From Adineta vaga (Eukaryota; Animalia; Rotifera), in NCBI GenBank assembly GCA_021613535.1, contig CP075497.1:4526001-4590000 (forward strand): a stretch of DNA of 64,000 nucleotides, written 5' to 3'. Under the pieces are notes generated by a model. That model made no database searches, had not been told where the DNA came from, and saw nothing but the letters and a program-made list of their open reading frames with translations. The translations under genes were made by a program, and so were the position numbers. Positions 2,248-53,781 of this stretch are shown here, in pieces (the stretch's first letter is position 1; every line of letters begins with the position of its first letter).

Positions 2248-2350
2248 TGTTGCTCTGGCAGATCAATGTTACCATCGATCCGCTTGATTTCGTCATCGCA
2301 ACATGTATTCTATTTTTTTTATATATACCTTTTGGTAAGTTGTAATAAGC
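2248..2350 (-). ncRNA. SL RNA: Spliced-leader RNA gene, type A copy 1 (SL-A1)
   Basis: Minus strand reads AAGTT|GCTTATTACAACTTACCAAAAG|GTATAT. The exon (2350-2329) is 1 mismatch from the bdelloid SL and is followed by a GT donor. About 103 nt with a structured 3' stem; PSE-like box 38 nt upstream. Confidence 0.88.
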
Positions 2351-2460
2351 AACTTTCTCCACGATCAAAGATCCACGCCCTCTAGCGTGTCTCTACACTT
2401 TCTCCTTTTTTCTTTCCTTTCTATACATCAGATATATACAGAATATCATTGAATAAAGTT

Positions 2461-2555
2461 ACTTACTACAACTTATACCAAGAGGTAAATGATCTTACTA
2501 AATCAAATTCATGTTGTGTAGATTGGTGATTAACACTGATCTACCAGAGCAGCAC
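2461..2555 (+). ncRNA. SL RNA: Spliced-leader RNA gene, variant type B copy 1 (SL-B1), possibly promoter-damaged
   Basis: AAGTT|ACTTACTACAACTTATACCAAGAG|GTAAAT, a 24-nt exon at 2461-2484. 3' hairpin GTAGATTGGTG-ATTAA-CACTGATCTAC. The PSE-like remnant is only 17 nt from the start (~22-nt deletion). Confidence 0.75.
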
Positions 2556-2664
2556 TCTTTCATTCAAAACAAAGCAAAGAAAAAACAATCTAATGTAATT
2601 TCGTTTCATTACGAAATAATTCGATGACTATTTTCGTTCGGGTAAAAAAAACTAAAAATGAAAT

Positions 2665-2674
2665 GTGTGCAGAC
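2665..2674 (+). promoter_or_regulatory. PSE-like snRNA promoter element GTGTGCAGAC (U2 copy 1)
   Basis: The same 10-mer lies exactly 38 nt before +1 in all three U2 copies (2665-2674, 3792-3801, rc 5102-5111). Related boxes lie 37-39 nt before five SL genes. Confidence 0.75.
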
Positions 2675-2712
2675 ATGGTGGAGAAAAGAGAAAGGAAATG
2701 TTGCAGTTAGTT

Positions 2713-2904
2713 ATCGCTTCTCGGCCTTTTCGGCTAAGATCAAAGTGTAGTATCTGTTCTCGTCGGTTTGAAAGCCGGCGCTGGTCTCATTGAGGCCAGG
2801 CTCTTTCAAGCAGATTTTTGGACATGGGCCAGGATCACCCGAGTTCACTCGGACCTGTGCCACGGATCGTCTCGACACTGCAGTGCCGTCGAGTTTGGTC
2901 CACT
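2713..2904 (+). ncRNA. U2: U2 spliceosomal snRNA, copy 1
   Basis: 5' ATCGCTTCTCGGCCTTTTCGGCTAAGATCAAAGTGTAGTATCTGTTCT matches U2. Branch-recognition GTAGTA, stems IIa/IIb, Sm site AGATTTTTGG and SL-IV loop ACTGCAGT are all present; 192 nt. Confidence 0.97.
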
Positions 2905-2929
2905 CCCGTTTTCCTTCGGGACAACGGGA
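2904..2929 (+). other. Conserved cUUCGg hairpin immediately 3' of U2 (also 4032-4057 and rc 4847-4872)
   Basis: TCCCGTT-N-TCC-TTCG-GGA-N-AACGGGA in all three copies; only the unpaired N/N position varies. Confidence 0.75.
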
Positions 2930-3319
2930 ATCATTCTAACAAAAACTTATAATGAAAATCAGCTATAGTAATTTCCCTACTTTATTCGATCACAAAGTCA
3001 ATTCAAAGAAAACGTCTCGGAACAAATAATAAAAGAGTGAAAGAATGTTGAACAGATACTTGTTCACTTCTAATATCCATCTTCATAATCGATACATCTT
3101 ATTTTGATAAAGTATCTGTTATTTAATCCTACTATGGTTACATCTCTTCCAAATAAATCCAGTAGATGAAATACTTATACTATTTCACTTCTTATTCTTC
3201 TACATCTTTTTATCAAAGGTATATATAGTAGTGTATGTATAAAATAACTTGTTCAGTTGACTGATTGCTAATGTATGAGGACGACTCTCGTACTATTTTT
3301 CATTTATATTTGATTAAAG

Positions 3320-3425
3320 TGTTGCTCTGGCAGATTGATGATGAACATCAATCCACATTTTATCGTCATCGCAACCTATATTTGTATTCATATGGATATA
3401 TACCTTTTGGTAAATTGTAATAAGC
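3320..3425 (-). ncRNA. SL RNA: Spliced-leader RNA gene, type A copy 2 (SL-A2)
   Basis: Minus strand AAGTT|GCTTATTACAATTTACCAAAAG|GTATAT (exon 3425-3404); 106 nt. PSE-like GTGTAAAGAC 37 nt upstream (rc 3463-3472). Confidence 0.85.
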
Positions 3426-3556
3426 AACTTTCTTCTTTTCCAAGGAGAACGCCCGCTCTTCTGTCTTTACACTTTTCTCTTTTTTCTTTCTTTTACATAC
3501 ATCAGATATCTACGGACTGGAGAAACATCGTTTTCTTCACATCATCGACGAAAGTT

Positions 3557-3665
3557 GTCTATTACAATTTACACCAAGAGGTCAATGATCTTACTAGATC
3601 ACATACATGTTGCGATGACGATAAAATGTGGATTGATGTTCATCATCAATCTACCAGAGCAGCAC
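3557..3665 (+). ncRNA. SL RNA: Spliced-leader RNA gene, variant type B copy 2 (SL-B2)
   Basis: AAGTT|GTCTATTACAATTTACACCAAGAG|GTCAAT, a 24-nt exon at 3557-3580. GATC-TTACTA-GATC hairpin, then a full 3' stem. Confidence 0.8.
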
Positions 3666-3839
3666 TTTAATCAAACTAATATAAATGAAGCAATAGCAAT
3701 CATCACTCGTAGTTTCGTAACAGTGTATTTTTTCATCACGATATTACGAAAATCAATCAGTGACTCATATCGCATCAATTAGAAATGAATGGTGTGCAGA
3801 CGTAGTGCAGAAAAGGGAGAGGAAATTGTGATCGAAGTT

Positions 3840-4032
3840 ATCGCTTCTCGGCCCTCTCAGGCTAAGATCAAAGTGTAGTATCTGTTCTCGTCGGTTTGAA
3901 AGCCGGCGCTGGTCTCATTGAGGCCAGGCTCTTTCAAGCAGATTTTTGGACATGGGCCAGGATCACCCGAGTTCACTCGGACCTGTGCCACGGATCGTCT
4001 CGACACTGCAGTGCCGTCGAGTTTGGTCCACT
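3840..4032 (+). ncRNA. U2: U2 spliceosomal snRNA, copy 2 (stem-loop I loop variant)
   Basis: Identical to copy 1 except the SL-I loop reads CTCTCA instead of TTTTC; flanks are diverged. Confidence 0.96.
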
Positions 4033-4871
4033 CCCGTTCTCCTTCGGGATAACGGGAATCATCTCACCAAAAAAATAATGAAAAAAGAAAATACCTTATA
4101 ACGAACTTCTTTTGTTAAGAAGTACAAATTAGTATCATAATTGCTCTTCGTCCATTGTTTTCTTTTCCATTAAAGCAAAGTTCGTTACCGTTATGATAAA
4201 AATGAAATTCAACTGTTCAAGCCTCTTCTCGAATCATATTTAATGACAAATATGGATCAATGAATGTAGAATGTCATTCTTCACATAAGAATATCTACAT
4301 ATCGACTTACTCAATGAGAGGGTAGAGAGCGGAAGTATCATTTCAGTGTTCTTAGATAAAATATCTCGCGATTTCTTGTTCAAATAAACATCTTGAAAGA
4401 CCAGCTAATTTCAGAAATATACTTGAAAATTCTATTAACCAAAATTCATCAATAAACTTCTAATCATCATTTTGAATCGAAATGTAGGAACTTCGAAGGT
4501 AGATTTATAATGTATCGTAGACGTGCTGTTAAGACATGATTATCTTGACAGATCTAACTTTGATCATTGTAATATAAATATGATTGAATGTTGTTAATAT
4601 ATATGTAGTGCTTTCCAGTCATTTGTGTTTCAATGCTATGTAGATAATGAGTTTTTCTCTCGTACTACTTTCTCTCATGTGTCTATTAAAGGGAGCTTAG
4701 GAAGAGATAAGAGATTTCACAAGCTTCGAACGGAATCATAGCGATGATCTGTTAAAAGAGCACTATTCTGCATCTTCATTTCCTACTGCAACAAAGTAAG
4801 AAAATAAGTATATCTGATTTTCATTATAAGTTTTTGTTAGAATGATTCCCGTTGTCCCGAAGGAGAACGGG

Positions 4872-5063
4872 AGTGGACCAAACTCGACGGCACTGCAGTG
4901 TCGAGACGATCCGTGGCACAGGTCCGAGTGAACTCGGGTGATCCTGGCCCATGTCCAAAAATCTGCTTGAAAGAGCCTGGCCTCAATGAGACCAGCGCCG
5001 GCTTTCAAACCGACGAGAACAGATACTACACTTTGATCTTAGCCGAAAAGGCCGAGAAGCGAT
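4872..5063 (-). ncRNA. U2: U2 spliceosomal snRNA, copy 3
   Basis: Reverse complement of copy 1, with near-identical flanks. Confidence 0.97.
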
Positions 5064-5220
5064 AACTAACTGCAACATTTCCTTTCTCTTTTCTCCACCA
5101 TGTCTGCACACATTTCATTTTTAGTTTTTTTTACCCGAACGAAAATAGTCATCGAATTATTTCGTAATGAAACGAAATTACATTAGATTGTTTTTTCTTT
5201 GCTTTGTTTTGAATGAAAGA

Positions 5221-5315
5221 GTGCTGCTCTGGTAGATCAGTGTTAATCACCAATCTACACAACATGTATTTGATTTAGTAAGATCGTTTACCTCTTCGTA
5301 TAAGTTGTAATAAGT
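5221..5315 (-). ncRNA. SL RNA: Spliced-leader RNA gene, variant type B copy 3 (SL-B3)
   Basis: Minus strand AAGTT|ACTTATTACAACTTATACGAAGAG|GTAAAC (exon 5315-5292). PSE-like ATGTGCAGAC 39 nt upstream (rc 5355-5364). Confidence 0.8.
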
Positions 5316-5644
5316 AACTTTATTCGATGATGTGAAGAGAACGATATTGTTTTAGTCTGCACATATCGGACGTATGTAAACAAAAGAAAAGTGACGTCAC
5401 TAGGATATGATGTCATCGATCGACTGCTTGTTTAATTAATACAATGATCATGAATGACTATTGTGCATTCTCAATGAGAGTAATGATAAGATGTAGAATT
5501 AGAGATGGAGTTTTACGTAGAAAGTGTTGAATGTTAGGAGATCTTGTGTTTGGGGAAAACCTCTGATGTGATAGTTGAACGATTGTAAAGTGTAAAGTGT
5601 AGAGACACGCTAGATGGCGTGGATCGTTGACTATGGAGAAAGTT

Positions 5645-5749
5645 GCTTATTACAACTTACCAAGAGGTATATATAGAAAAAGATAAAATACATGTTGCGA
5701 TGACGAAATCAAGCGGATTGGTGGTAACACTGATCTGCCAGAGCAACAT
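5645..5749 (+). ncRNA. SL RNA: Spliced-leader RNA gene, type A copy 3 (canonical bdelloid SL)
   Basis: GCTTATTACAACTTACCAAGAG (5645-5666) followed by GT equals the published bdelloid leader GGCTTATTACAACTTACCAAGAG (recalled) minus its first G. About 105 nt; PSE-like GTGTAGAGAC at 5597-5606, 38 nt upstream. Confidence 0.93.
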
Positions 5750-48723: not shown

Positions 48724-49025
48724 TTACTTGTTTATAGTTTCTATCATGGCTTTTGTAGTTTGATATACAAATAAAACTAAATACATCGGTAGATTTAAGG
48801 TTCATAATATTTCAGTTAAAACACTTGCTTTCGTATTCTAAGCAATGTTTTATTATACACGAATTTATTAATTGTTTAGTTCTATCACAGATTTGTCTAC
48901 AAATCAAAGTTACAATTCACAATTATGCATATCACTACATATTCTATTGATTAGACTATAATATCTGATTTGATCAGAAAAAGAAAATCATTAAAAAACA
49001 AGCTTTGTAAAAATATAGATTGCAT

Positions 49026-50459
49026 TTAATCACGAATTATACCACGAATCGGTTCACCTGGTAGTTTTATATTCTTATCTATAGTTACCAATTTTTCATT
49101 ACGTACAACAAATATTCCATTGACAAGTACGTGTACTATTCCTTGTGAAGGAAGTTTTGGTTCTTCATAAGTAGCACAATCTTTTACTGTTAATGGATTA
49201 AATATACATAGATCTGCTATTGCACCGATACAGATACGACCTCTGATTTTCATTTGTAACGAAGCACTTTCTAATCGCTGTGCGGGAAAAAGAGACATTT
49301 TTCGGATAGCTTCCATCAATGTGATCAGATGACATTCACGAACATAATGACCAAGAACACGTGCACAAGAACCAGCTGCACGTGGATGACCACGAAGTGC
49401 ATCACTACCCATCAAAGTAATTGGACTTTGAAGGCAATCTACAACTGCTTGTTCAGGTATAGAATTAATAATAATCAATCCACCTTCTTTACGATATCTA
49501 TTGAAACTATTGATATCTAATTGCTCTTTTGTATTAACATAGGTCAAACTATTATAACCAATACCTAATTGTTCTTGCCAAAGCTCATCATTGAATAATG
49601 CCGAATCTATTGAACTACAACCAGCTAGATACGGATCTACAATACAATGATTTTATTACTACTAGTTTCTGTATTTAATTGAAGTAGGCTTACAAAATTC
49701 TGTTGTGATATCCATTCCATTCTTATGAGCATCATGAATAAGTTCGAGAGCCTTGTTGGTTGCCGATAAACATGTACTATGTATATGGCAAACATTAATT
49801 GCAGCTTTTGTACATGCACCTAGAGCAAGAACTTCTTGTAGAGCAGCTAAGCTACCATTTTTTTCTTGTGCACCAAAATGACGCATATGAACATGACAAC
49901 AAACATTATATGTTTTTGCTAAACGAAAACATTCAACAATTTCCCATCGTGTTGCTGCTGGAACATAATGAATACCAAAACCCATTGCCATTGCACCACG
50001 GCGAAGACCATATTCCAATTCTTTTGTAATCTGATCAATTCTGTCTGGTTGTAGTGCTGCTGGTGAATCACTTTGTGGTAAGAAACCAGGTGGATGATCA
50101 AATACTTTCATTCGTACCTGAATATGTCCAATACCAACTCCATAATTGACTAAAGTTTTATTTTCTCTTTCAGCATACCATTGATCAATATCATTGGTGC
50201 CAACTTCTAATTCAAATACTGATGTCACACCATCTTGACATTTCAATGCATAGTACTCATCTGTATGTTCATGAGAATGAACATCGATAAAACCAGGACA
50301 AAGAATTAGATTTGAAATATCAACTTCAACATGTCCTTTTAGAACTTGTTCACTAATTGCTACGATGAATCCGTTACTAATACCGATAGATCGGATAGCA
50401 TCAAGATTTGTTTCAGGATCCATAACTCGACCATTGAGAAAAACGAGATCATAAATCAT
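49026..50459 (-). CDS. Bacterial-type amidohydrolase (N-acyl-D-amino-acid / D-glutamate deacylase-like), one 57-nt intron; HGT candidate
   Basis: YDLVFLNGRVMDPE..LDA.R.IGI; PGFIDVHSH metal motif; HVHMR; EF|YPY across intron 49637-49693; GSD..GHPRAAGS.ARVLG.YVRE; EAIRKMS.FPA. Confidence 0.9.
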
Positions 50460-50596
50460 CTTTTCTTGCTTAAAATAAGATTTTCTAGAAAAGAAAAATA
50501 AATAATAAAAACAAAACAATCTAAAGATTGATTATAACATATTAACACTTGATCAATATATACAAAAAACGGCAAAAAAAAATACAAAAAACGAGT

Positions 50597-52709
50597 TCAA
50601 TCTAGTATAACAATTTCAGAATGTTCTTTGAATTTCTTTGAAGGTGATCGTTTTTGAACAATAGATGAACTATTCTTTGTTGTTTCTCTTTTGTAATAAT
50701 CATATAATGTTCTTTTAGTAGATGTAATCTGTTGTTGTTGTTGTTTTGATCGTCGTCGAGGAATAAGTGTTTGGACCTGACGTTCTTCTATGATTGTAAT
50801 TGATTGCGATTCTTGAGTATCATGCGAATCAAGAATAGTATAAACATCTGGTTCAGTTACAGAAGTTTGTGAAAGAGACCTATCTCTTTTCGGTGGAAGA
50901 GATGCTGTTGATAGAATTGTTACTCTACTACTGTTCAGTGAATCTTCATTTGTTTCTGTTTCATTGATTAATTGTTGTACAGGAGATGCAGATCGAGATA
51001 CTAAAGTTATTGAAATAAAAAAAAACACTTTTTCAGATAGGAAATGTTGGAAAATTTACATGGAGGTGGAAGAATATCGACAATATCATATTCATATTCA
51101 TCACATTTCTCATGGAATGGTTCGACAACAAGTTCTATTTCCGCTTCGATTTCTTCTCGATCATCTTCACTGTTGGATTTTTCCGATGTTTCGATATTCT
51201 CTTCTGATTCCAATTCTGGATCAATTTGAGAAAATTCTTGTAAAATCTACATTGAAAGAAAACGAGAAATTTATTTCATAATTTCATATTCAATTACTTT
51301 TTCTGTTTTAATCACAGCTTCACGTTTATTTTCATTCAATGTATTTTCAAGCTCAATACTATTCGATGCTGGATCATATTGTTCAATACTAATAAAATCA
51401 AACTATTGTAAACTAATAAGAAATATTCTTATGAATTTTACTCGAAATCTTCAGGAAGACGACTGCTCATAATATCATTAAAATCTGCCATTCGTCGATT
51501 TTTAACTTTTGTACCAATCAATTTAAATATTTTTTCCGCAAGAGTTTTTCGGTTATCCGCCCTAGAGATCCATATGCATTGATTAATAACCAAGAAGTAA
51601 AACAATGTCTTACTCGAGATTTAGTTTACATTTATCATTTGTTTTTTCTACAGTTTGAAGAACATCATAGAATGAAGGTAAATATTTTGTTTGATTTATC
51701 ATTTCTTCAACAGCTTGATGTATTGATGGATAAAAAATATCATTTTCTACAAAATAACGATAATATCGAGAAATAAACTTTCGAAGAATTGAAACTTACC
51801 GGAAAGAGTTATAGGTTGATCAAGAATTCTATTTGCTGATGCTGATTCATTATTCAATTTTGTAAGTTTAGCATACATCTATATCAAATATTTCTGATGA
51901 TATTTTTCAAAAAAATCAATAGCTAGAAGTTACTTCACAAGCTTGTTTTTTTAGACTTGATTCGACTTCGTACAGATCACAATGTTCCATTTCATCTAAT
52001 GACATGTCTTTTTCTTCTAATTCTCGAATTAATTTTGATAAACTAGTGAGTCGTCGTTGTAATTTATTGATTTTCTTCTCTCGTTTTAATTCACATGGAT
52101 TCGGTGTTATTTGTGTTTCGACATTTCTGAGAGGTTGACGAGCTTCATCAAATATTGTACAAATATCATTACAAGAATTTAGAAGTTGTTCAACTGTTTG
52201 TTCTTCAGTAGTCGATGACGTTAAATGTACAGCAGTGTTAGTAGAACATTTCGATGATATAATTACAGTCTTTCTACTTGTTGATAATGTTGTTTCAACT
52301 AAATCGGTATCTTGAATAGAACTAGAAGTTAAAAAGAATGAATAGTAAATCAATCGTTTATCGTTCCATCGTACCCTTTTAATTTGATGCTATGCTTTTT
52401 TAATTGTTGATCGAATGAAGATAGTAATGTGAAATATTTTGTCGATTTATCATTTTTATTGAACAAATCATGAAGATAATCGAATGATGATTGAAAATCT
52501 GTTGAACATAAATAAGATGATGATGCTGCATTAAAGTGACGACGAAGTTTATTTTCAAGAATATTGATATCTTTTTCATGTGCAAGAACATGATTAACCG
52601 ATAAAAGAAACTAAATAAGAAGAAGAAAAAAAATCATTATCTTACAAAGAAATCTTTAACACACTTGTTCAAATTGAATTTTAATATTATTAAATATTAC
52701 TTCCGTCAT
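50597..52709 (-). CDS. DAXX: DAXX-like histone H3.3 chaperone
   Basis: Histone-binding-domain-like IRELEEKDMSLDEM...YEVES.LK; F.LIG.KVKNRR..D; acidic tract; terminal SIM EIVILD*. Confidence 0.8.
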
Positions 52710-53781
52710 CTAGAACGAAAATCACGAAAAACTCAATTATTTATCATGATAATCATTCCAGAAAGTGTGATTAATTGTATACTGTATTAAACTGATATTT
52801 CTATATCTATAAAAGATATCAAACTTTACAAAGTTCAGTATATTCTCACATATAATTCCAATGAATGCGTTATTTGTGATCCAACATAACTTATATCGTT
52901 TACTGAATTGTATATTAGATTTCGTTGAGAACTGTATAGTTGATCTTTATTTTGATAAAAGTAAAACAGATATTTCTACATAGATGAAATAGTCTTTATT
53001 CTTACATTTATGATTATCTTGTAAGTTCATAGAGTATATTGAACGATAAAACCGAAATTTTATTCACGATCAAGGTAGATAACTAGTAATCGATATTGAA
53101 TATCATCATATTTATATTTGAATTAATATTTTCACTGTATTATACATAAGAACAGAATTATATCCCATAAGTTTTCTTTGAAAAGTGAGCGTTAACTAGA
53201 TGTTATTTCTGATATGATTCTATAATTGAGTCTTTCTCGTTATTATCACGATTATTTAATATATGAAAAGAAAGAATTTTATAATTAACAGCTCAGAAAG
53301 TATTTCGTTTTCAGGCCGCAATCGCCTCTATGATGGACGCAGGCATGTGTCCAGAGCTCGACTGGATCAAACGCAAATTAACTCATCACCGCTGTTGTTT
53401 TATAGTACAAAAAAAAAAGAAATACGATTCAACTTTAATAAATAAATGAATGAATGACCAAATACAATAAACATTCAACTATCCATTCATTGAATCGTTA
53501 TCAGACTATTTCGACTTTTCAATGTCCTCTATCTTTCTATATATTTGTTTTCACGAAATAAATTATTTTTGAATAATTACTAAATTATTTTAAATATTTC
53601 ATTATTGAAAATTGTCTATTTATATTTTCTAACGACATCTTTTCAACTGATATTAGAATATCAACCAATAAATCGAAATAAGTATTTATTTGCTGACTCA
53701 TCGTTATCGTTTCTTAAATCGAATTTACATTACATACATACATCTTTTACTTACAATTATATCGTTTGAAACGAATCAATC

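What the first reader, a model, noticed from the sequence alone, without database searches (positions are those of the whole stretch)
49026..52709. Bacterial-type amidohydrolase only 137 bp behind DAXX: an HGT gene possibly domesticated through an operon and trans-splicing
Seen: DAXX stop at 50597 and amidohydrolase ATG at 50459, same strand. The gap is almost all U-rich sequence ending in a strong acceptor (TTTTTCTTTTCTAG, AG at 50486-50485) 25 nt before the ATG, with little room for a promoter and no AATAAA. Established: bdelloids carry many foreign genes, and SL addition can supply cap and 5' UTR to promoterless cistrons. Inference: the foreign gene is expressed from the DAXX promoter and released by trans-splicing, a concrete route for activating HGT genes. 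A cis 5'-UTR intron from a GTATAT in the gap is an alternative.
Basis: partly seen in the sequence, partly recalled or inferred. Interest (0 to 1): 0.8.

Follow-up and report, generated by a model that had tools for sequence, protein, structure and literature searches.

The report
Bacterial amidohydrolase gene tucked behind rotifer DAXX
A bacterial enzyme gene taken up long ago by bdelloid rotifers is now an expressed, intron-bearing animal gene that has stayed 80-230 bases behind the DAXX gene across many species, which fits but does not prove that it is transcribed as the second gene of an operon and released by spliced-leader trans-splicing.

Summary
In Adineta vaga (chromosome 6), a DAXX-like gene stops at 50597. 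A PRK09061-type amidohydrolase starts at 50459 on the same strand. The gap is 137 nt, 55% T, has no AATAAA, and has a 12/12-pyrimidine acceptor 25 nt before the ATG.

Horizontal transfer is well supported:
- Bdelloid copies form one clade nested in soil-bacterial sequences.
- Codon use matches the host, one intron was gained, and the bacterial signal peptide is gone.
- RNA contigs from three studies show the intron removed; a fourth covers only exon 2.

The operon reading is neither shown nor refuted:
- No RNA contig covers 50459-50551, so neither a leader junction nor a two-gene precursor was seen.
- Nine intact loci (Adineta, Rotaria, unnamed bdelloids) keep DAXX upstream and an acceptor before the ATG.
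- A Rotaria sordida copy cut off from DAXX about 200 nt upstream has a stop codon and evolves neutrally.
- One unnamed bdelloid keeps an intact, constrained copy without DAXX.

I put the operon at about 0.45 and an own compact promoter with trans-splicing at about 0.35.

The scan has reported spliced-leader operon candidates elsewhere in this genome. It also raised the same transfer-via-operon idea once (s1-490074), which was not followed up.

The parts
50597..52709 (-). DAXX-like gene: 9 coding exons, 560 codons plus stop, ATG at 52709, TGA at 50599-50597
   Evidence: Pfam DAXX_hist_bd is split over two exons (E 9e-5 and 3e-5, consecutive profile positions) and the Daxx N-terminal domain scores weakly. 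Orthologue proteins carry PF20920. All 8 introns appear as GT..AG joints in RNA contigs. A codon walk gives one stop, at codon 561.
52710..52711 (-). AG acceptor directly before the DAXX ATG; probable leader addition site of DAXX itself
   Evidence: The X11 contig aligns only up to 52711 and has 4 more letters that do not fit the genome. The depth bin also ends there. This is inference; the 4 letters were not shown.
50552..50596 (-). DAXX 3' UTR, at least this far
   Evidence: The 1733-nt spliced X11 contig ends at 50552. X1 and X14 contigs stop at 50584, beside polymorphic T-runs.
50557..50564 (-). Conserved TGTATATA inside the DAXX 3' UTR (Pumilio-site-like, or a polyadenylation element)
   Evidence: TGTATAT(A/T) is present in A. 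ricciae, A. steineri, Rotaria, L006 and L013. A related GTATATATA lies after the stop of the chromosome-3 DAXX ohnologue.
50518..50537 (-). Conserved block TTATAATCAATCTTTAGATT in the gap; function open (promoter/initiator-like, DAXX cleavage region, or intercistronic signal)
   Evidence: Conserved in three Adineta species and, as TCAATGATCAGATT, in Rotaria. It is not a common genome motif: 77 hits against 11 for the reversed control in 100 Mb.
50485..50498 (-). Polypyrimidine tract plus AG: candidate spliced-leader acceptor
   Evidence: 12/12 pyrimidines, which is rare in the window. The position is conserved in the bdelloid loci read. No cis joint ends here.
50460..50484 (-). Predicted 25-nt 5' UTR after leader addition
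   Evidence: Inference from the acceptor. No RNA contig covers it.
49694..50459 (-). Amidohydrolase exon 1 (255 codons plus the first base of codon 256)
   Evidence: NF006560 E 4.6e-71, profile 25-288. 100% identical to A. vaga protein UJR35948.1.
49637..49693 (-). 57-nt GT..AG intron, phase 1, gained after the transfer
   Evidence: Joint 49636/49694 in X1, X11 and X14. An intron sits at the same exon boundary in every bdelloid copy compared. Bacterial homologues are colinear across it.
49026..49636 (-). Amidohydrolase exon 2, including the stop at 49026-49028
   Evidence: NF006560 E 7.5e-47, profile 291-513. 100% identical to residues 257-458 of UJR35948.1.
48810..49025 (-). Amidohydrolase 3' UTR with AATAAA at 48869-48864 and 48854-48849
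   Evidence: RNA contigs reach 48860 (X11) and 48810 (X5). Sequence read.

Best explanation
The downstream gene is a bacterial metal-dependent amidohydrolase of the PRK09061 subfamily, related to D-aminoacylase and N-acyl-D-glutamate deacylase. The ancestor of Adineta and Rotaria acquired it once, and it is now fully domesticated: host codon usage, one gained spliceosomal intron, bacterial signal/lipoprotein peptide lost, metal ligands intact, and transcribed. It was inserted, or has stayed, directly behind the histone-chaperone gene DAXX. I take the pair to be a two-gene spliced-leader operon. On that reading, transcription starts upstream of DAXX and DAXX is cleaved and polyadenylated near 50552. 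The U-rich remainder of the gap serves as downstream element and polypyrimidine tract. The 22-nt leader is then spliced onto the acceptor at 50485, giving the foreign cistron its cap and a 25-nt 5' UTR. Shown: gene identity, bacterial origin, expression, splicing, conserved adjacency, conserved acceptor, and leader genes in the genome. Inferred: leader addition at this acceptor, and co-transcription. The confidence given is for the whole statement including the operon; the transfer and domestication part alone I hold at above 0.95.
For: Identity: the whole public protein scores 420.8 bits on NF006560 against a cut-off of 340. The exons match it separately. H61, H63, H191, H225 and D334 are invariant across 22 homologues. 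The nearest solved structures are an amidohydrolase family protein (9g5m), N-acyl-D-glutamate deacylase (3gip) and D-aminoacylase.
Origin: seven bdelloid proteins form one clade (SH-aLRT 100, stem 0.87). It lies inside a 99-supported clade of Acidobacteriota, Planctomycetota, Chloroflexota and Gemmatimonadota MAGs. The best non-rotifer hits are 48-53% identical and bacterial or metagenomic. GC3 is 0.15, against 0.14-0.15 for DAXX and the neighbouring GPCR gene. Bacterial homologues carry 14-35 extra N-terminal residues with lipobox or signal features that the rotifer protein lacks.
Expression: spliced RNA contigs in X1, X11 and X14, and an exon-2 contig in X5.
Operon-type anatomy: same strand, 137-nt gap, no canonical poly(A) hexamer, and an unusually pure acceptor. 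There are 58 leader-gene matches in the genome against 0 for the control.
Conservation: DAXX lies upstream at 81-228 nt in nine intact loci. In Rotaria both outer neighbours differ from Adineta, yet the pair is kept.
Natural experiment: the R. sordida copy whose upstream homology stops about 200 nt before the ATG, at telomere-like repeats, has Q75 changed to a stop. It shows 32 nonsynonymous to 9 synonymous changes, against 17:14 on its DAXX-linked sister (Fisher p = 0.044).
The chromosome-3 DAXX ohnologue has no downstream amidohydrolase and has an ordinary AATAAA about 200 nt after its stop.
Against: No RNA contig covers 50459-50551 in any of four runs. Amidohydrolase contigs stop at 50450 (X1, X11) or 50458 (X14), and no loose end with leader letters was reported. 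The junction and the precursor are therefore unseen. Contigs drop rare forms and short tips, so this is absence of evidence only.
An unnamed bdelloid (L015) has an intact copy under purifying selection (20 nonsynonymous to 35 synonymous unique changes). It has no DAXX, a 570-nt upstream region unrelated to the gap, and an upstream gene with its own AATAAA.
A conserved 20-nt block in the gap could be a core promoter.
A gap this short is a small target for rearrangement, so conserved adjacency is weak evidence. The decayed R. sordida copy coexists with an intact one and may simply have been redundant.
Confidence: 0.45

Rival explanations
1. The gene has its own compact promoter and is a monocistronic gene. 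Transcription of the amidohydrolase starts in the gap or in the last DAXX exon. The short outron is replaced by the spliced leader at 50485. The closeness to DAXX is only tight packing.
For: A conserved 20-nt block with TATAAT- and TCA(A/G)TC-like initiator features lies 35-50 nt upstream of the acceptor. The L015 copy works without DAXX and still has an acceptor 20 nt before its ATG, so the acceptor does not depend on an operon. No bridging RNA was seen. A short gap is rarely hit by breakpoints, which explains the conserved adjacency without selection.
Against: After subtracting at least 45 nt of DAXX 3' UTR and 25 nt of 5' UTR, at most 67 nt remain in A. vaga, and the whole gap is only about 81 nt in L102. 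The R. sordida copy that keeps about 190 nt of the gap, including the block and the acceptor, decayed. The block is not a recurrent promoter motif in the genome.
Confidence: 0.35
2. There is no trans-splicing at this site. The mRNA starts in the gap and keeps a genome-colinear 5' UTR. The pyrimidine tract plus AG would then be part of a T-rich intergenic region or of the DAXX polyadenylation downstream element.
For: No leader was seen on this gene. The gap is T-rich throughout.
Against: RNA contigs of depth 9-28 never extend into 50459-50484, which a colinear UTR should allow. An acceptor is seen 11-30 nt before the ATG in all the loci read, including L015 with wholly different upstream DNA. 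DAXX itself appears to lose genome colinearity exactly at an AG before its ATG.
Confidence: 0.12
3. There is cis-splicing. A 5' UTR intron runs from the GTATAT at 50563 (or from a donor in DAXX) to the acceptor at 50485, giving a read-through or fused DAXX-amidohydrolase transcript.
For: GTATAT is conserved in the gap.
Against: No joint ending at 50485 in four runs, although all 9 other introns of the two genes are seen. The X11 DAXX contig reads through GTATAT unspliced. The motif also follows the stop of the DAXX ohnologue that has no downstream gene, so it belongs to the DAXX 3' UTR.
Confidence: 0.05
4. The gene is not a transfer: it is bacterial contamination or a vertically inherited metazoan gene.
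For: None beyond the formal possibility. Only bacterial and rotifer sequences were available for the tree.
Against: The gene lies between metazoan genes on a 13.9-Mb chromosome. It has a spliceosomal intron removed in RNA and host codon usage. It keeps the same neighbours in at least 9 bdelloid assemblies. No non-rotifer eukaryote appears among the 120 best of 369 hits. It is nested in bacteria.
Confidence: 0.02

Closest known systems
Nematode (C. elegans) operons resolved by spliced-leader trans-splicing
   Same: Same-strand genes about 100-200 nt apart. A U-rich intercistronic stretch lies between the upstream 3' end and a strong acceptor just before the downstream ATG. The leader would supply the cap. 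(Established knowledge; Spieth et al. 1993 is cited in PMC6053224.)
   Different: No operon-specific leader is known in rotifers. The upstream gene lacks AAUAAA here. Neither leader addition nor the polycistronic precursor is shown for this pair. Operons had not been reported in rotifers according to PMC7986045.
Tunicate (Ciona, Oikopleura) and chaetognath operons with a single leader
   Same: One leader class serves both monocistronic and operonic genes. Candidates are defined by gaps under about 250 nt (PMC12460157).
   Different: In tunicate operons the poly(A) site abuts the next acceptor. Here the DAXX contig ends 67 nt before the acceptor, although contig ends are unreliable.
Leader trans-splicing as an aid to expressing transferred genes (Paulinella micropora, Matsuo et al. 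2018, PMC6053224)
   Same: The same concept: the leader gives cap and 5' UTR to a foreign coding sequence. That paper names rotifers as a likely case.
   Different: That proposal concerns leader addition only, not use of a neighbour's promoter through an operon. No rotifer locus was analysed there.
Bdelloid horizontally acquired genes (Gladyshev, Meselson and Arkhipova 2008, cited in PMC6053224; later genome papers, from my own knowledge)
   Same: A bacterial enzyme gene that has gained an intron, taken on host composition, and is expressed and conserved across bdelloid families.
   Different: It is not in a subtelomeric foreign-gene cluster in A. vaga. Instead it is wedged between conserved metazoan genes, and its linkage to one of them is conserved.
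N-acyl-D-amino-acid deacylases / D-aminoacylases (PDB 3gip, 1m7j) and NCBIfam PRK09061
   Same: Same fold family by sequence. The HxH, His, His and Asp metal ligands are conserved.
   Different: Only about 25-30% of the sequence is alike to the solved enzymes, and the match covers residues 94-440. The Cys ligand of D-aminoacylase is not the conserved residue here. The substrate is unknown.

Membership tests
NCBIfam NF006560 (PRK09061) amidohydrolase subfamily | Whole-protein HMM score at or above the curated cut-off (340 bits) | tested here: met
   P0001, which is identical to both window exons, scores 420.8 bits over profile positions 25-513 of 517.
NCBIfam NF006560 (PRK09061) amidohydrolase subfamily | Metal-binding residues of the amidohydrolase superfamily (HxH, two further His, Asp) | tested here: met
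   H61, H63, H191, H225 and D334 are invariant in an alignment of 22 rotifer and bacterial proteins.
NCBIfam NF006560 (PRK09061) amidohydrolase subfamily | Hydrolytic activity on an N-acyl-D-amino acid or related amide | not testable with these tools
   Needs expression and an enzyme assay.
Horizontally acquired bdelloid gene | Groups inside a non-metazoan clade | tested here: met
   The bdelloid clade (support 100) is nested in a 99-supported bacterial clade.
Horizontally acquired bdelloid gene | No orthologue in other animals | tested here: inconclusive
   None among the 120 listed of 369 hits, with candidate lengths limited to 157-499 aa. No named eukaryote collection could be searched.
Horizontally acquired bdelloid gene | Integrated in the host chromosome and expressed (not contamination) | tested here: met
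   Flanked by DAXX and a GPCR gene on chromosome 6. The intron is removed in RNA contigs.
Spliced-leader-resolved operon | Same-strand genes separated by a short intercistronic region | tested here: met
   137 nt in A. vaga and 81-228 nt in eight other loci.
Spliced-leader-resolved operon | Leader RNA genes present in the genome | tested here: met
   58 matches to the leader followed by GT, against 0 for the control. Three of them lie in this window.
Spliced-leader-resolved operon | Downstream mRNA carries the leader at the acceptor | tested here: inconclusive
   Contigs stop at 50450 or 50458 and no loose end was reported. Two pattern scans of JGI contigs found nothing.
Spliced-leader-resolved operon | Polycistronic precursor spans the gap | tested here: inconclusive
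   No contig covers 50459-50551 in four runs. Contigs do not keep rare precursors.
Spliced-leader-resolved operon | No independent promoter for the downstream gene | not testable with these tools
   Needs mapping of capped 5' ends or promoter deletion.
DAXX histone chaperone | DAXX histone-binding domain (PF20920) | tested here: met
   Two consecutive exons match profile positions 14-49 and 51-80 (E 9e-5 and 3e-5). Each is below the gathering score on its own. Whole orthologue proteins have PF20920 on record. The joined A. vaga protein was not scanned.

The most novel reading that the evidence does not exclude
A bacterial gene has been kept for tens of millions of years as the promoterless second cistron of a DAXX operon. 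Leader trans-splicing supplies its cap. Copies cut off from DAXX die unless they land behind new transcription. This would be both a documented rotifer operon and a concrete, reusable route by which bdelloids switch on foreign genes.
Probability: 0.35. Interest if true: 0.75.

Novelty: new variant of a known kind. Interest (0 to 1): 0.5.

Why it matters
Bdelloid rotifers hold more foreign genes than any other animals, and how a promoterless bacterial coding sequence first becomes expressed is an open question. If this pair is a true operon, it gives a testable locus for the idea of activation by landing behind a host gene and being released by the spliced leader. It comes with built-in natural controls: a severed and decayed copy in Rotaria sordida, and a relocated, living copy in another bdelloid. 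It would also add to the case that rotifers have operons, which the searched literature does not report (PMC7986045). If the gene has its own promoter, the locus is simply one more well-domesticated transfer.

Tried and rejected
1. Reads: the single read-laying run returned Logan contigs only. These cannot show 5' ends or rare precursors, and the gap is a hole.
2. I looked for RNA-derived full-length or N-terminal protein fragments whose contigs might carry the leader. Cluster listing found only genome-derived members. A short N-terminal query found no A. vaga fragments.
3. The 474-aa product P0011 looked like leader plus UTR read in frame (16 extra residues). It is the intron read through in frame, so this was rejected.
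4. I tried to reach the A. vaga DAXX protein id through a stop-free ORF of L006, in order to fetch RNA contigs of DAXX. That search found only two ENA proteins.
5. Two JGI pattern scans for leader plus the conserved N-terminus gave 0 hits.
6. The conserved gap block as a genome-wide promoter motif: only 77 copies, so it is not a general element.
7. Homology between the L015 upstream region and the DAXX gap: none above shuffled controls.
8. Rfam found no RNA family in the gap.
9. Paper searches for the run accessions and for leader-bearing foreign transcripts in bdelloids found nothing usable.
10. The large representative-protein search was not used.
Exons were searched by reference and the public protein P0001 stood in for the whole enzyme. 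The joined DAXX protein was never built for a search. Its frame was checked by a codon walk that printed only counts.
Full report
WHAT IS THERE
The window is Adineta vaga chromosome 6 (G000:C6:4526001-4590000). The downstream gene's public protein is UJR35948.1, 'hypothetical protein I4U23_028689'.

On the minus strand a nine-exon DAXX-like gene runs from ATG 52709 to TGA 50599-50597. A two-exon amidohydrolase gene follows:
- ATG at 50459; exon 1 runs to 49694.
- A 57-nt intron lies at 49693-49637.
- Exon 2 runs to the stop at 49028-49026.

The gap between the genes is 137 nt and 55% T. It has no AATAAA or ATTAAA. A 12/12-pyrimidine tract ends in AG at 50486-50485, 25 nt before the ATG. Only 4 of 2937 AGs on this strand of the window have a tract this pure.

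GENE IDENTITIES
The amidohydrolase exons match NCBIfam NF006560 (PRK09061) separately, with E 4.6e-71 and 7.5e-47 over consecutive profile ranges. The whole public protein is identical to both exons. It scores 420.8 bits against a cut-off of 340.

H61, H63, H191, H225 and D334 are invariant across rotifer and bacterial homologues. The nearest solved structures are an unnamed amidohydrolase (9g5m), N-acyl-D-glutamate deacylase (3gip) and D-aminoacylase.

The upstream gene carries the DAXX histone-binding domain split over two exons. Its orthologues' whole proteins have PF20920 on record.

Exons were searched by reference, and the joined DAXX protein was not scanned. Its reading frame was verified by a codon walk: 561 codons, with one stop at the end.

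EXPRESSION
Four runs from four studies were laid. All are Logan contigs, and they are clearly RNA because introns are cleanly removed.
- The amidohydrolase intron joint (49636/49694) appears in X1, X11 and X14. X5 covers only exon 2.
- All eight DAXX introns appear as GT..AG joints, each in one to four runs.
- Amidohydrolase contigs reach 48810-48860 at the 3' end, past two AATAAA signals.
- At the 5' end they stop at 50450 (X1, X11) or 50458 (X14).
- DAXX contigs stop at 50552 (X11) or 50584 (X1, X14).

The depth figures show that nothing at all was laid on 50459-50551. So there is no bridge, no leader and no colinear 5' UTR. Polymorphic T-runs and tip clipping in contig assembly can produce such holes, so this shows nothing either way.

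One useful detail concerns DAXX. The X11 DAXX contig aligns only up to 52711, the A of the AG that directly precedes the DAXX ATG. Four further letters do not fit the genome. That is what a leader ending in ...AG would give, so DAXX itself is probably trans-spliced (inference).

LEADER GENES
The leader recalled from the literature, followed by GT, matches 58 places in the genome against 0 for the reversed control. There are C and A variants at position 10. Three copies lie in this window, next to three U2 snRNA genes.

BACTERIAL ORIGIN
The best non-rotifer hits are 48-53% identical. They are metagenomic 'N-acyl-D-aspartate/D-glutamate deacylases' and MAGs of Pyrinomonadaceae, Bryobacterales, Pirellulales and others.

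In a 93-protein tree the seven bdelloid sequences form one clade (support 100, stem 0.87). That clade sits inside a 99-supported clade of soil-bacterial phyla.

Signs of domestication:
- GC3 is 0.15, the same as DAXX and the neighbouring GPCR gene.
- Most bacterial homologues begin with 14-35 residues of signal or lipobox type. The rotifer protein lacks these and starts two residues before the conserved YD motif.
- An intron at the same exon boundary is found in every bdelloid copy compared, and bacteria are colinear across it.

The haploid assembly holds one copy. The chromosome-3 ohnologous region keeps PSMD3 and a DAXX copy but has no amidohydrolase. Its DAXX has an ordinary AATAAA about 200 nt after the stop. 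This is a single, ancient transfer and contamination is excluded.

COMPARATIVE TEST OF THE LINKAGE
DAXX lies directly upstream, on the same strand, in nine intact loci:
- A. vaga (the window)
- A. ricciae (L002)
- A. steineri (L005)
- two contigs of one ENA metagenome (L006, L102)
- two Logan contigs (L016, L103)
- Rotaria sp. Silwood2 (L003/L004)
- R. sordida (L104/L105)

The gaps are 81-228 nt. In Rotaria the outer neighbours on both sides differ from Adineta.

The gap alignment shows three conserved elements:
- TGTATAT(A). It also follows the stop of the DAXX ohnologue, so it belongs to the DAXX 3' UTR.
- A 20-nt block at 50537-50518. It is not a common genome motif.
- The pyrimidine tract plus AG 11-30 nt before the ATG.

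Two loci break the rule.

(i) R. sordida carries a second copy (L013/L014) that is sister to its DAXX-linked copy (94% DNA identity). Its homology to the gap ends about 200 nt before the ATG, at CCCACA/GGGTGT telomere-like repeats.
- In both assemblies this copy has Q75 changed to TAA.
- On its own branch it shows 32 nonsynonymous to 9 synonymous codon changes, against 17:14 for the linked sister (Fisher p = 0.044).
- The database model of 438 aa skips the stop.

(ii) A Logan contig of an unnamed bdelloid (L015) has an intact copy under purifying selection (20:35 unique changes).
- It lies 570 nt behind an ART-domain ORF that has its own AATAAA.
- Its upstream DNA shows no similarity to the DAXX gap.
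- It still has an acceptor 20 nt before its ATG.

READING
The acceptor is seen in every context read, including wholly new upstream DNA. No cis joint ends on it, and colinear RNA is missing from the 5' UTR. Together these make leader trans-splicing the most likely origin of the mRNA 5' end (about 0.7-0.8).

Whether the precursor starts at the DAXX promoter is open.

For the operon:
- the very short gaps, down to about 81 nt
- at least 45 nt of the A. vaga gap taken up by the DAXX 3' UTR
- the missing poly(A) hexamer
- conserved linkage despite rearranged flanks
- decay of the copy that kept 190 nt of upstream sequence but lost DAXX

Against the operon:
- the living copy without DAXX
- the conserved block, which could be a core promoter
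- the small breakpoint target that a short gap offers
- the redundancy of the decayed copy
- the lack of any direct RNA link

I put the operon at about 0.45, an own promoter with trans-splicing at about 0.35, no trans-splicing at about 0.12, and a cis intron at about 0.05.

COMPARISON WITH WHAT IS KNOWN
Leader trans-splicing in rotifers and massive transfer in bdelloids are established; both are cited in PMC6053224. That paper already speculates that the leader eases expression of transferred genes, and it names rotifers.

Operons had not been reported in rotifers as of PMC7986045. PMC12460157 lists rotifers among trans-splicing lineages without operon data.

Earlier follow-ups of this scan report leader-resolved operon candidates at other places in this genome. 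One first-stage note (s1-490074) raises the same transfer-via-operon idea elsewhere. These are unchecked AI notes. I used them only as leads.

VERDICT
The transfer itself is an ordinary, already annotated kind of bdelloid gene. The operon reading is a good but unproven candidate. The comparative data found here make it directly testable.

Noticed in passing
window 2327-5668: A cluster of three spliced-leader RNA genes (2327-2350 minus, 3402-3425 minus, 5645-5668 plus) is interleaved with three U2 snRNA genes (2713-2908 plus, 3840-4036 plus, 4868-5063 minus). Two of the leader copies end in AAAAG instead of AAGAG before the GT.
   Followed up: partly
window 52828-53100 (minus strand): Low-depth spliced RNA contigs in X14 and X5 lie upstream of the DAXX ATG, with a GT..AG intron at 53005-52945. 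This is probably the DAXX outron or non-coding 5' exons, which would place the DAXX start site at or beyond 53100, towards the divergent PSMD3 gene. It could also be a separate non-coding RNA.
   Followed up: no
window 52710-52715: The X11 DAXX contig loses genome colinearity exactly at the AG before the ATG, with 4 unaligned letters left. This suggests leader addition directly at the DAXX start codon.
   Followed up: partly
L013 4740-4800 and L014 (Rotaria sordida): Inverted telomere-like repeats (GGGTGT and CCCACA runs) mark the point where homology to the DAXX gap ends, about 200 nt upstream of the amidohydrolase pseudogene. This looks like a healed chromosome break.
   Followed up: partly
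L015 534-2129: A 531-aa intronless ORF with an ADP-ribosyltransferase (PF01129) domain lies 570 nt upstream of the DAXX-less amidohydrolase copy, on the same strand. A 3-hydroxyacyl-CoA dehydrogenase gene converges downstream.
   Followed up: no
L004 1-4773 (Rotaria sp. Silwood2): The database model fuses a Flavoprotein-domain gene with DAXX (660 aa). This may reflect another very tight same-strand pair upstream of DAXX in Rotaria.
   Followed up: no
L101 4187-6104 (A. vaga chromosome 3): The DAXX ohnologue is 52-56% identical in its conserved exons. The match to exon 3 contains one TGA, which may be an intron or a defect.
   Followed up: no
window 51388-51444 and 51557-51614: Alternative DAXX joints carry 2 or 4 extra letters (TT, TACT) in some runs. 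They are either allelic indels at intron ends or alternative acceptors.
   Followed up: no
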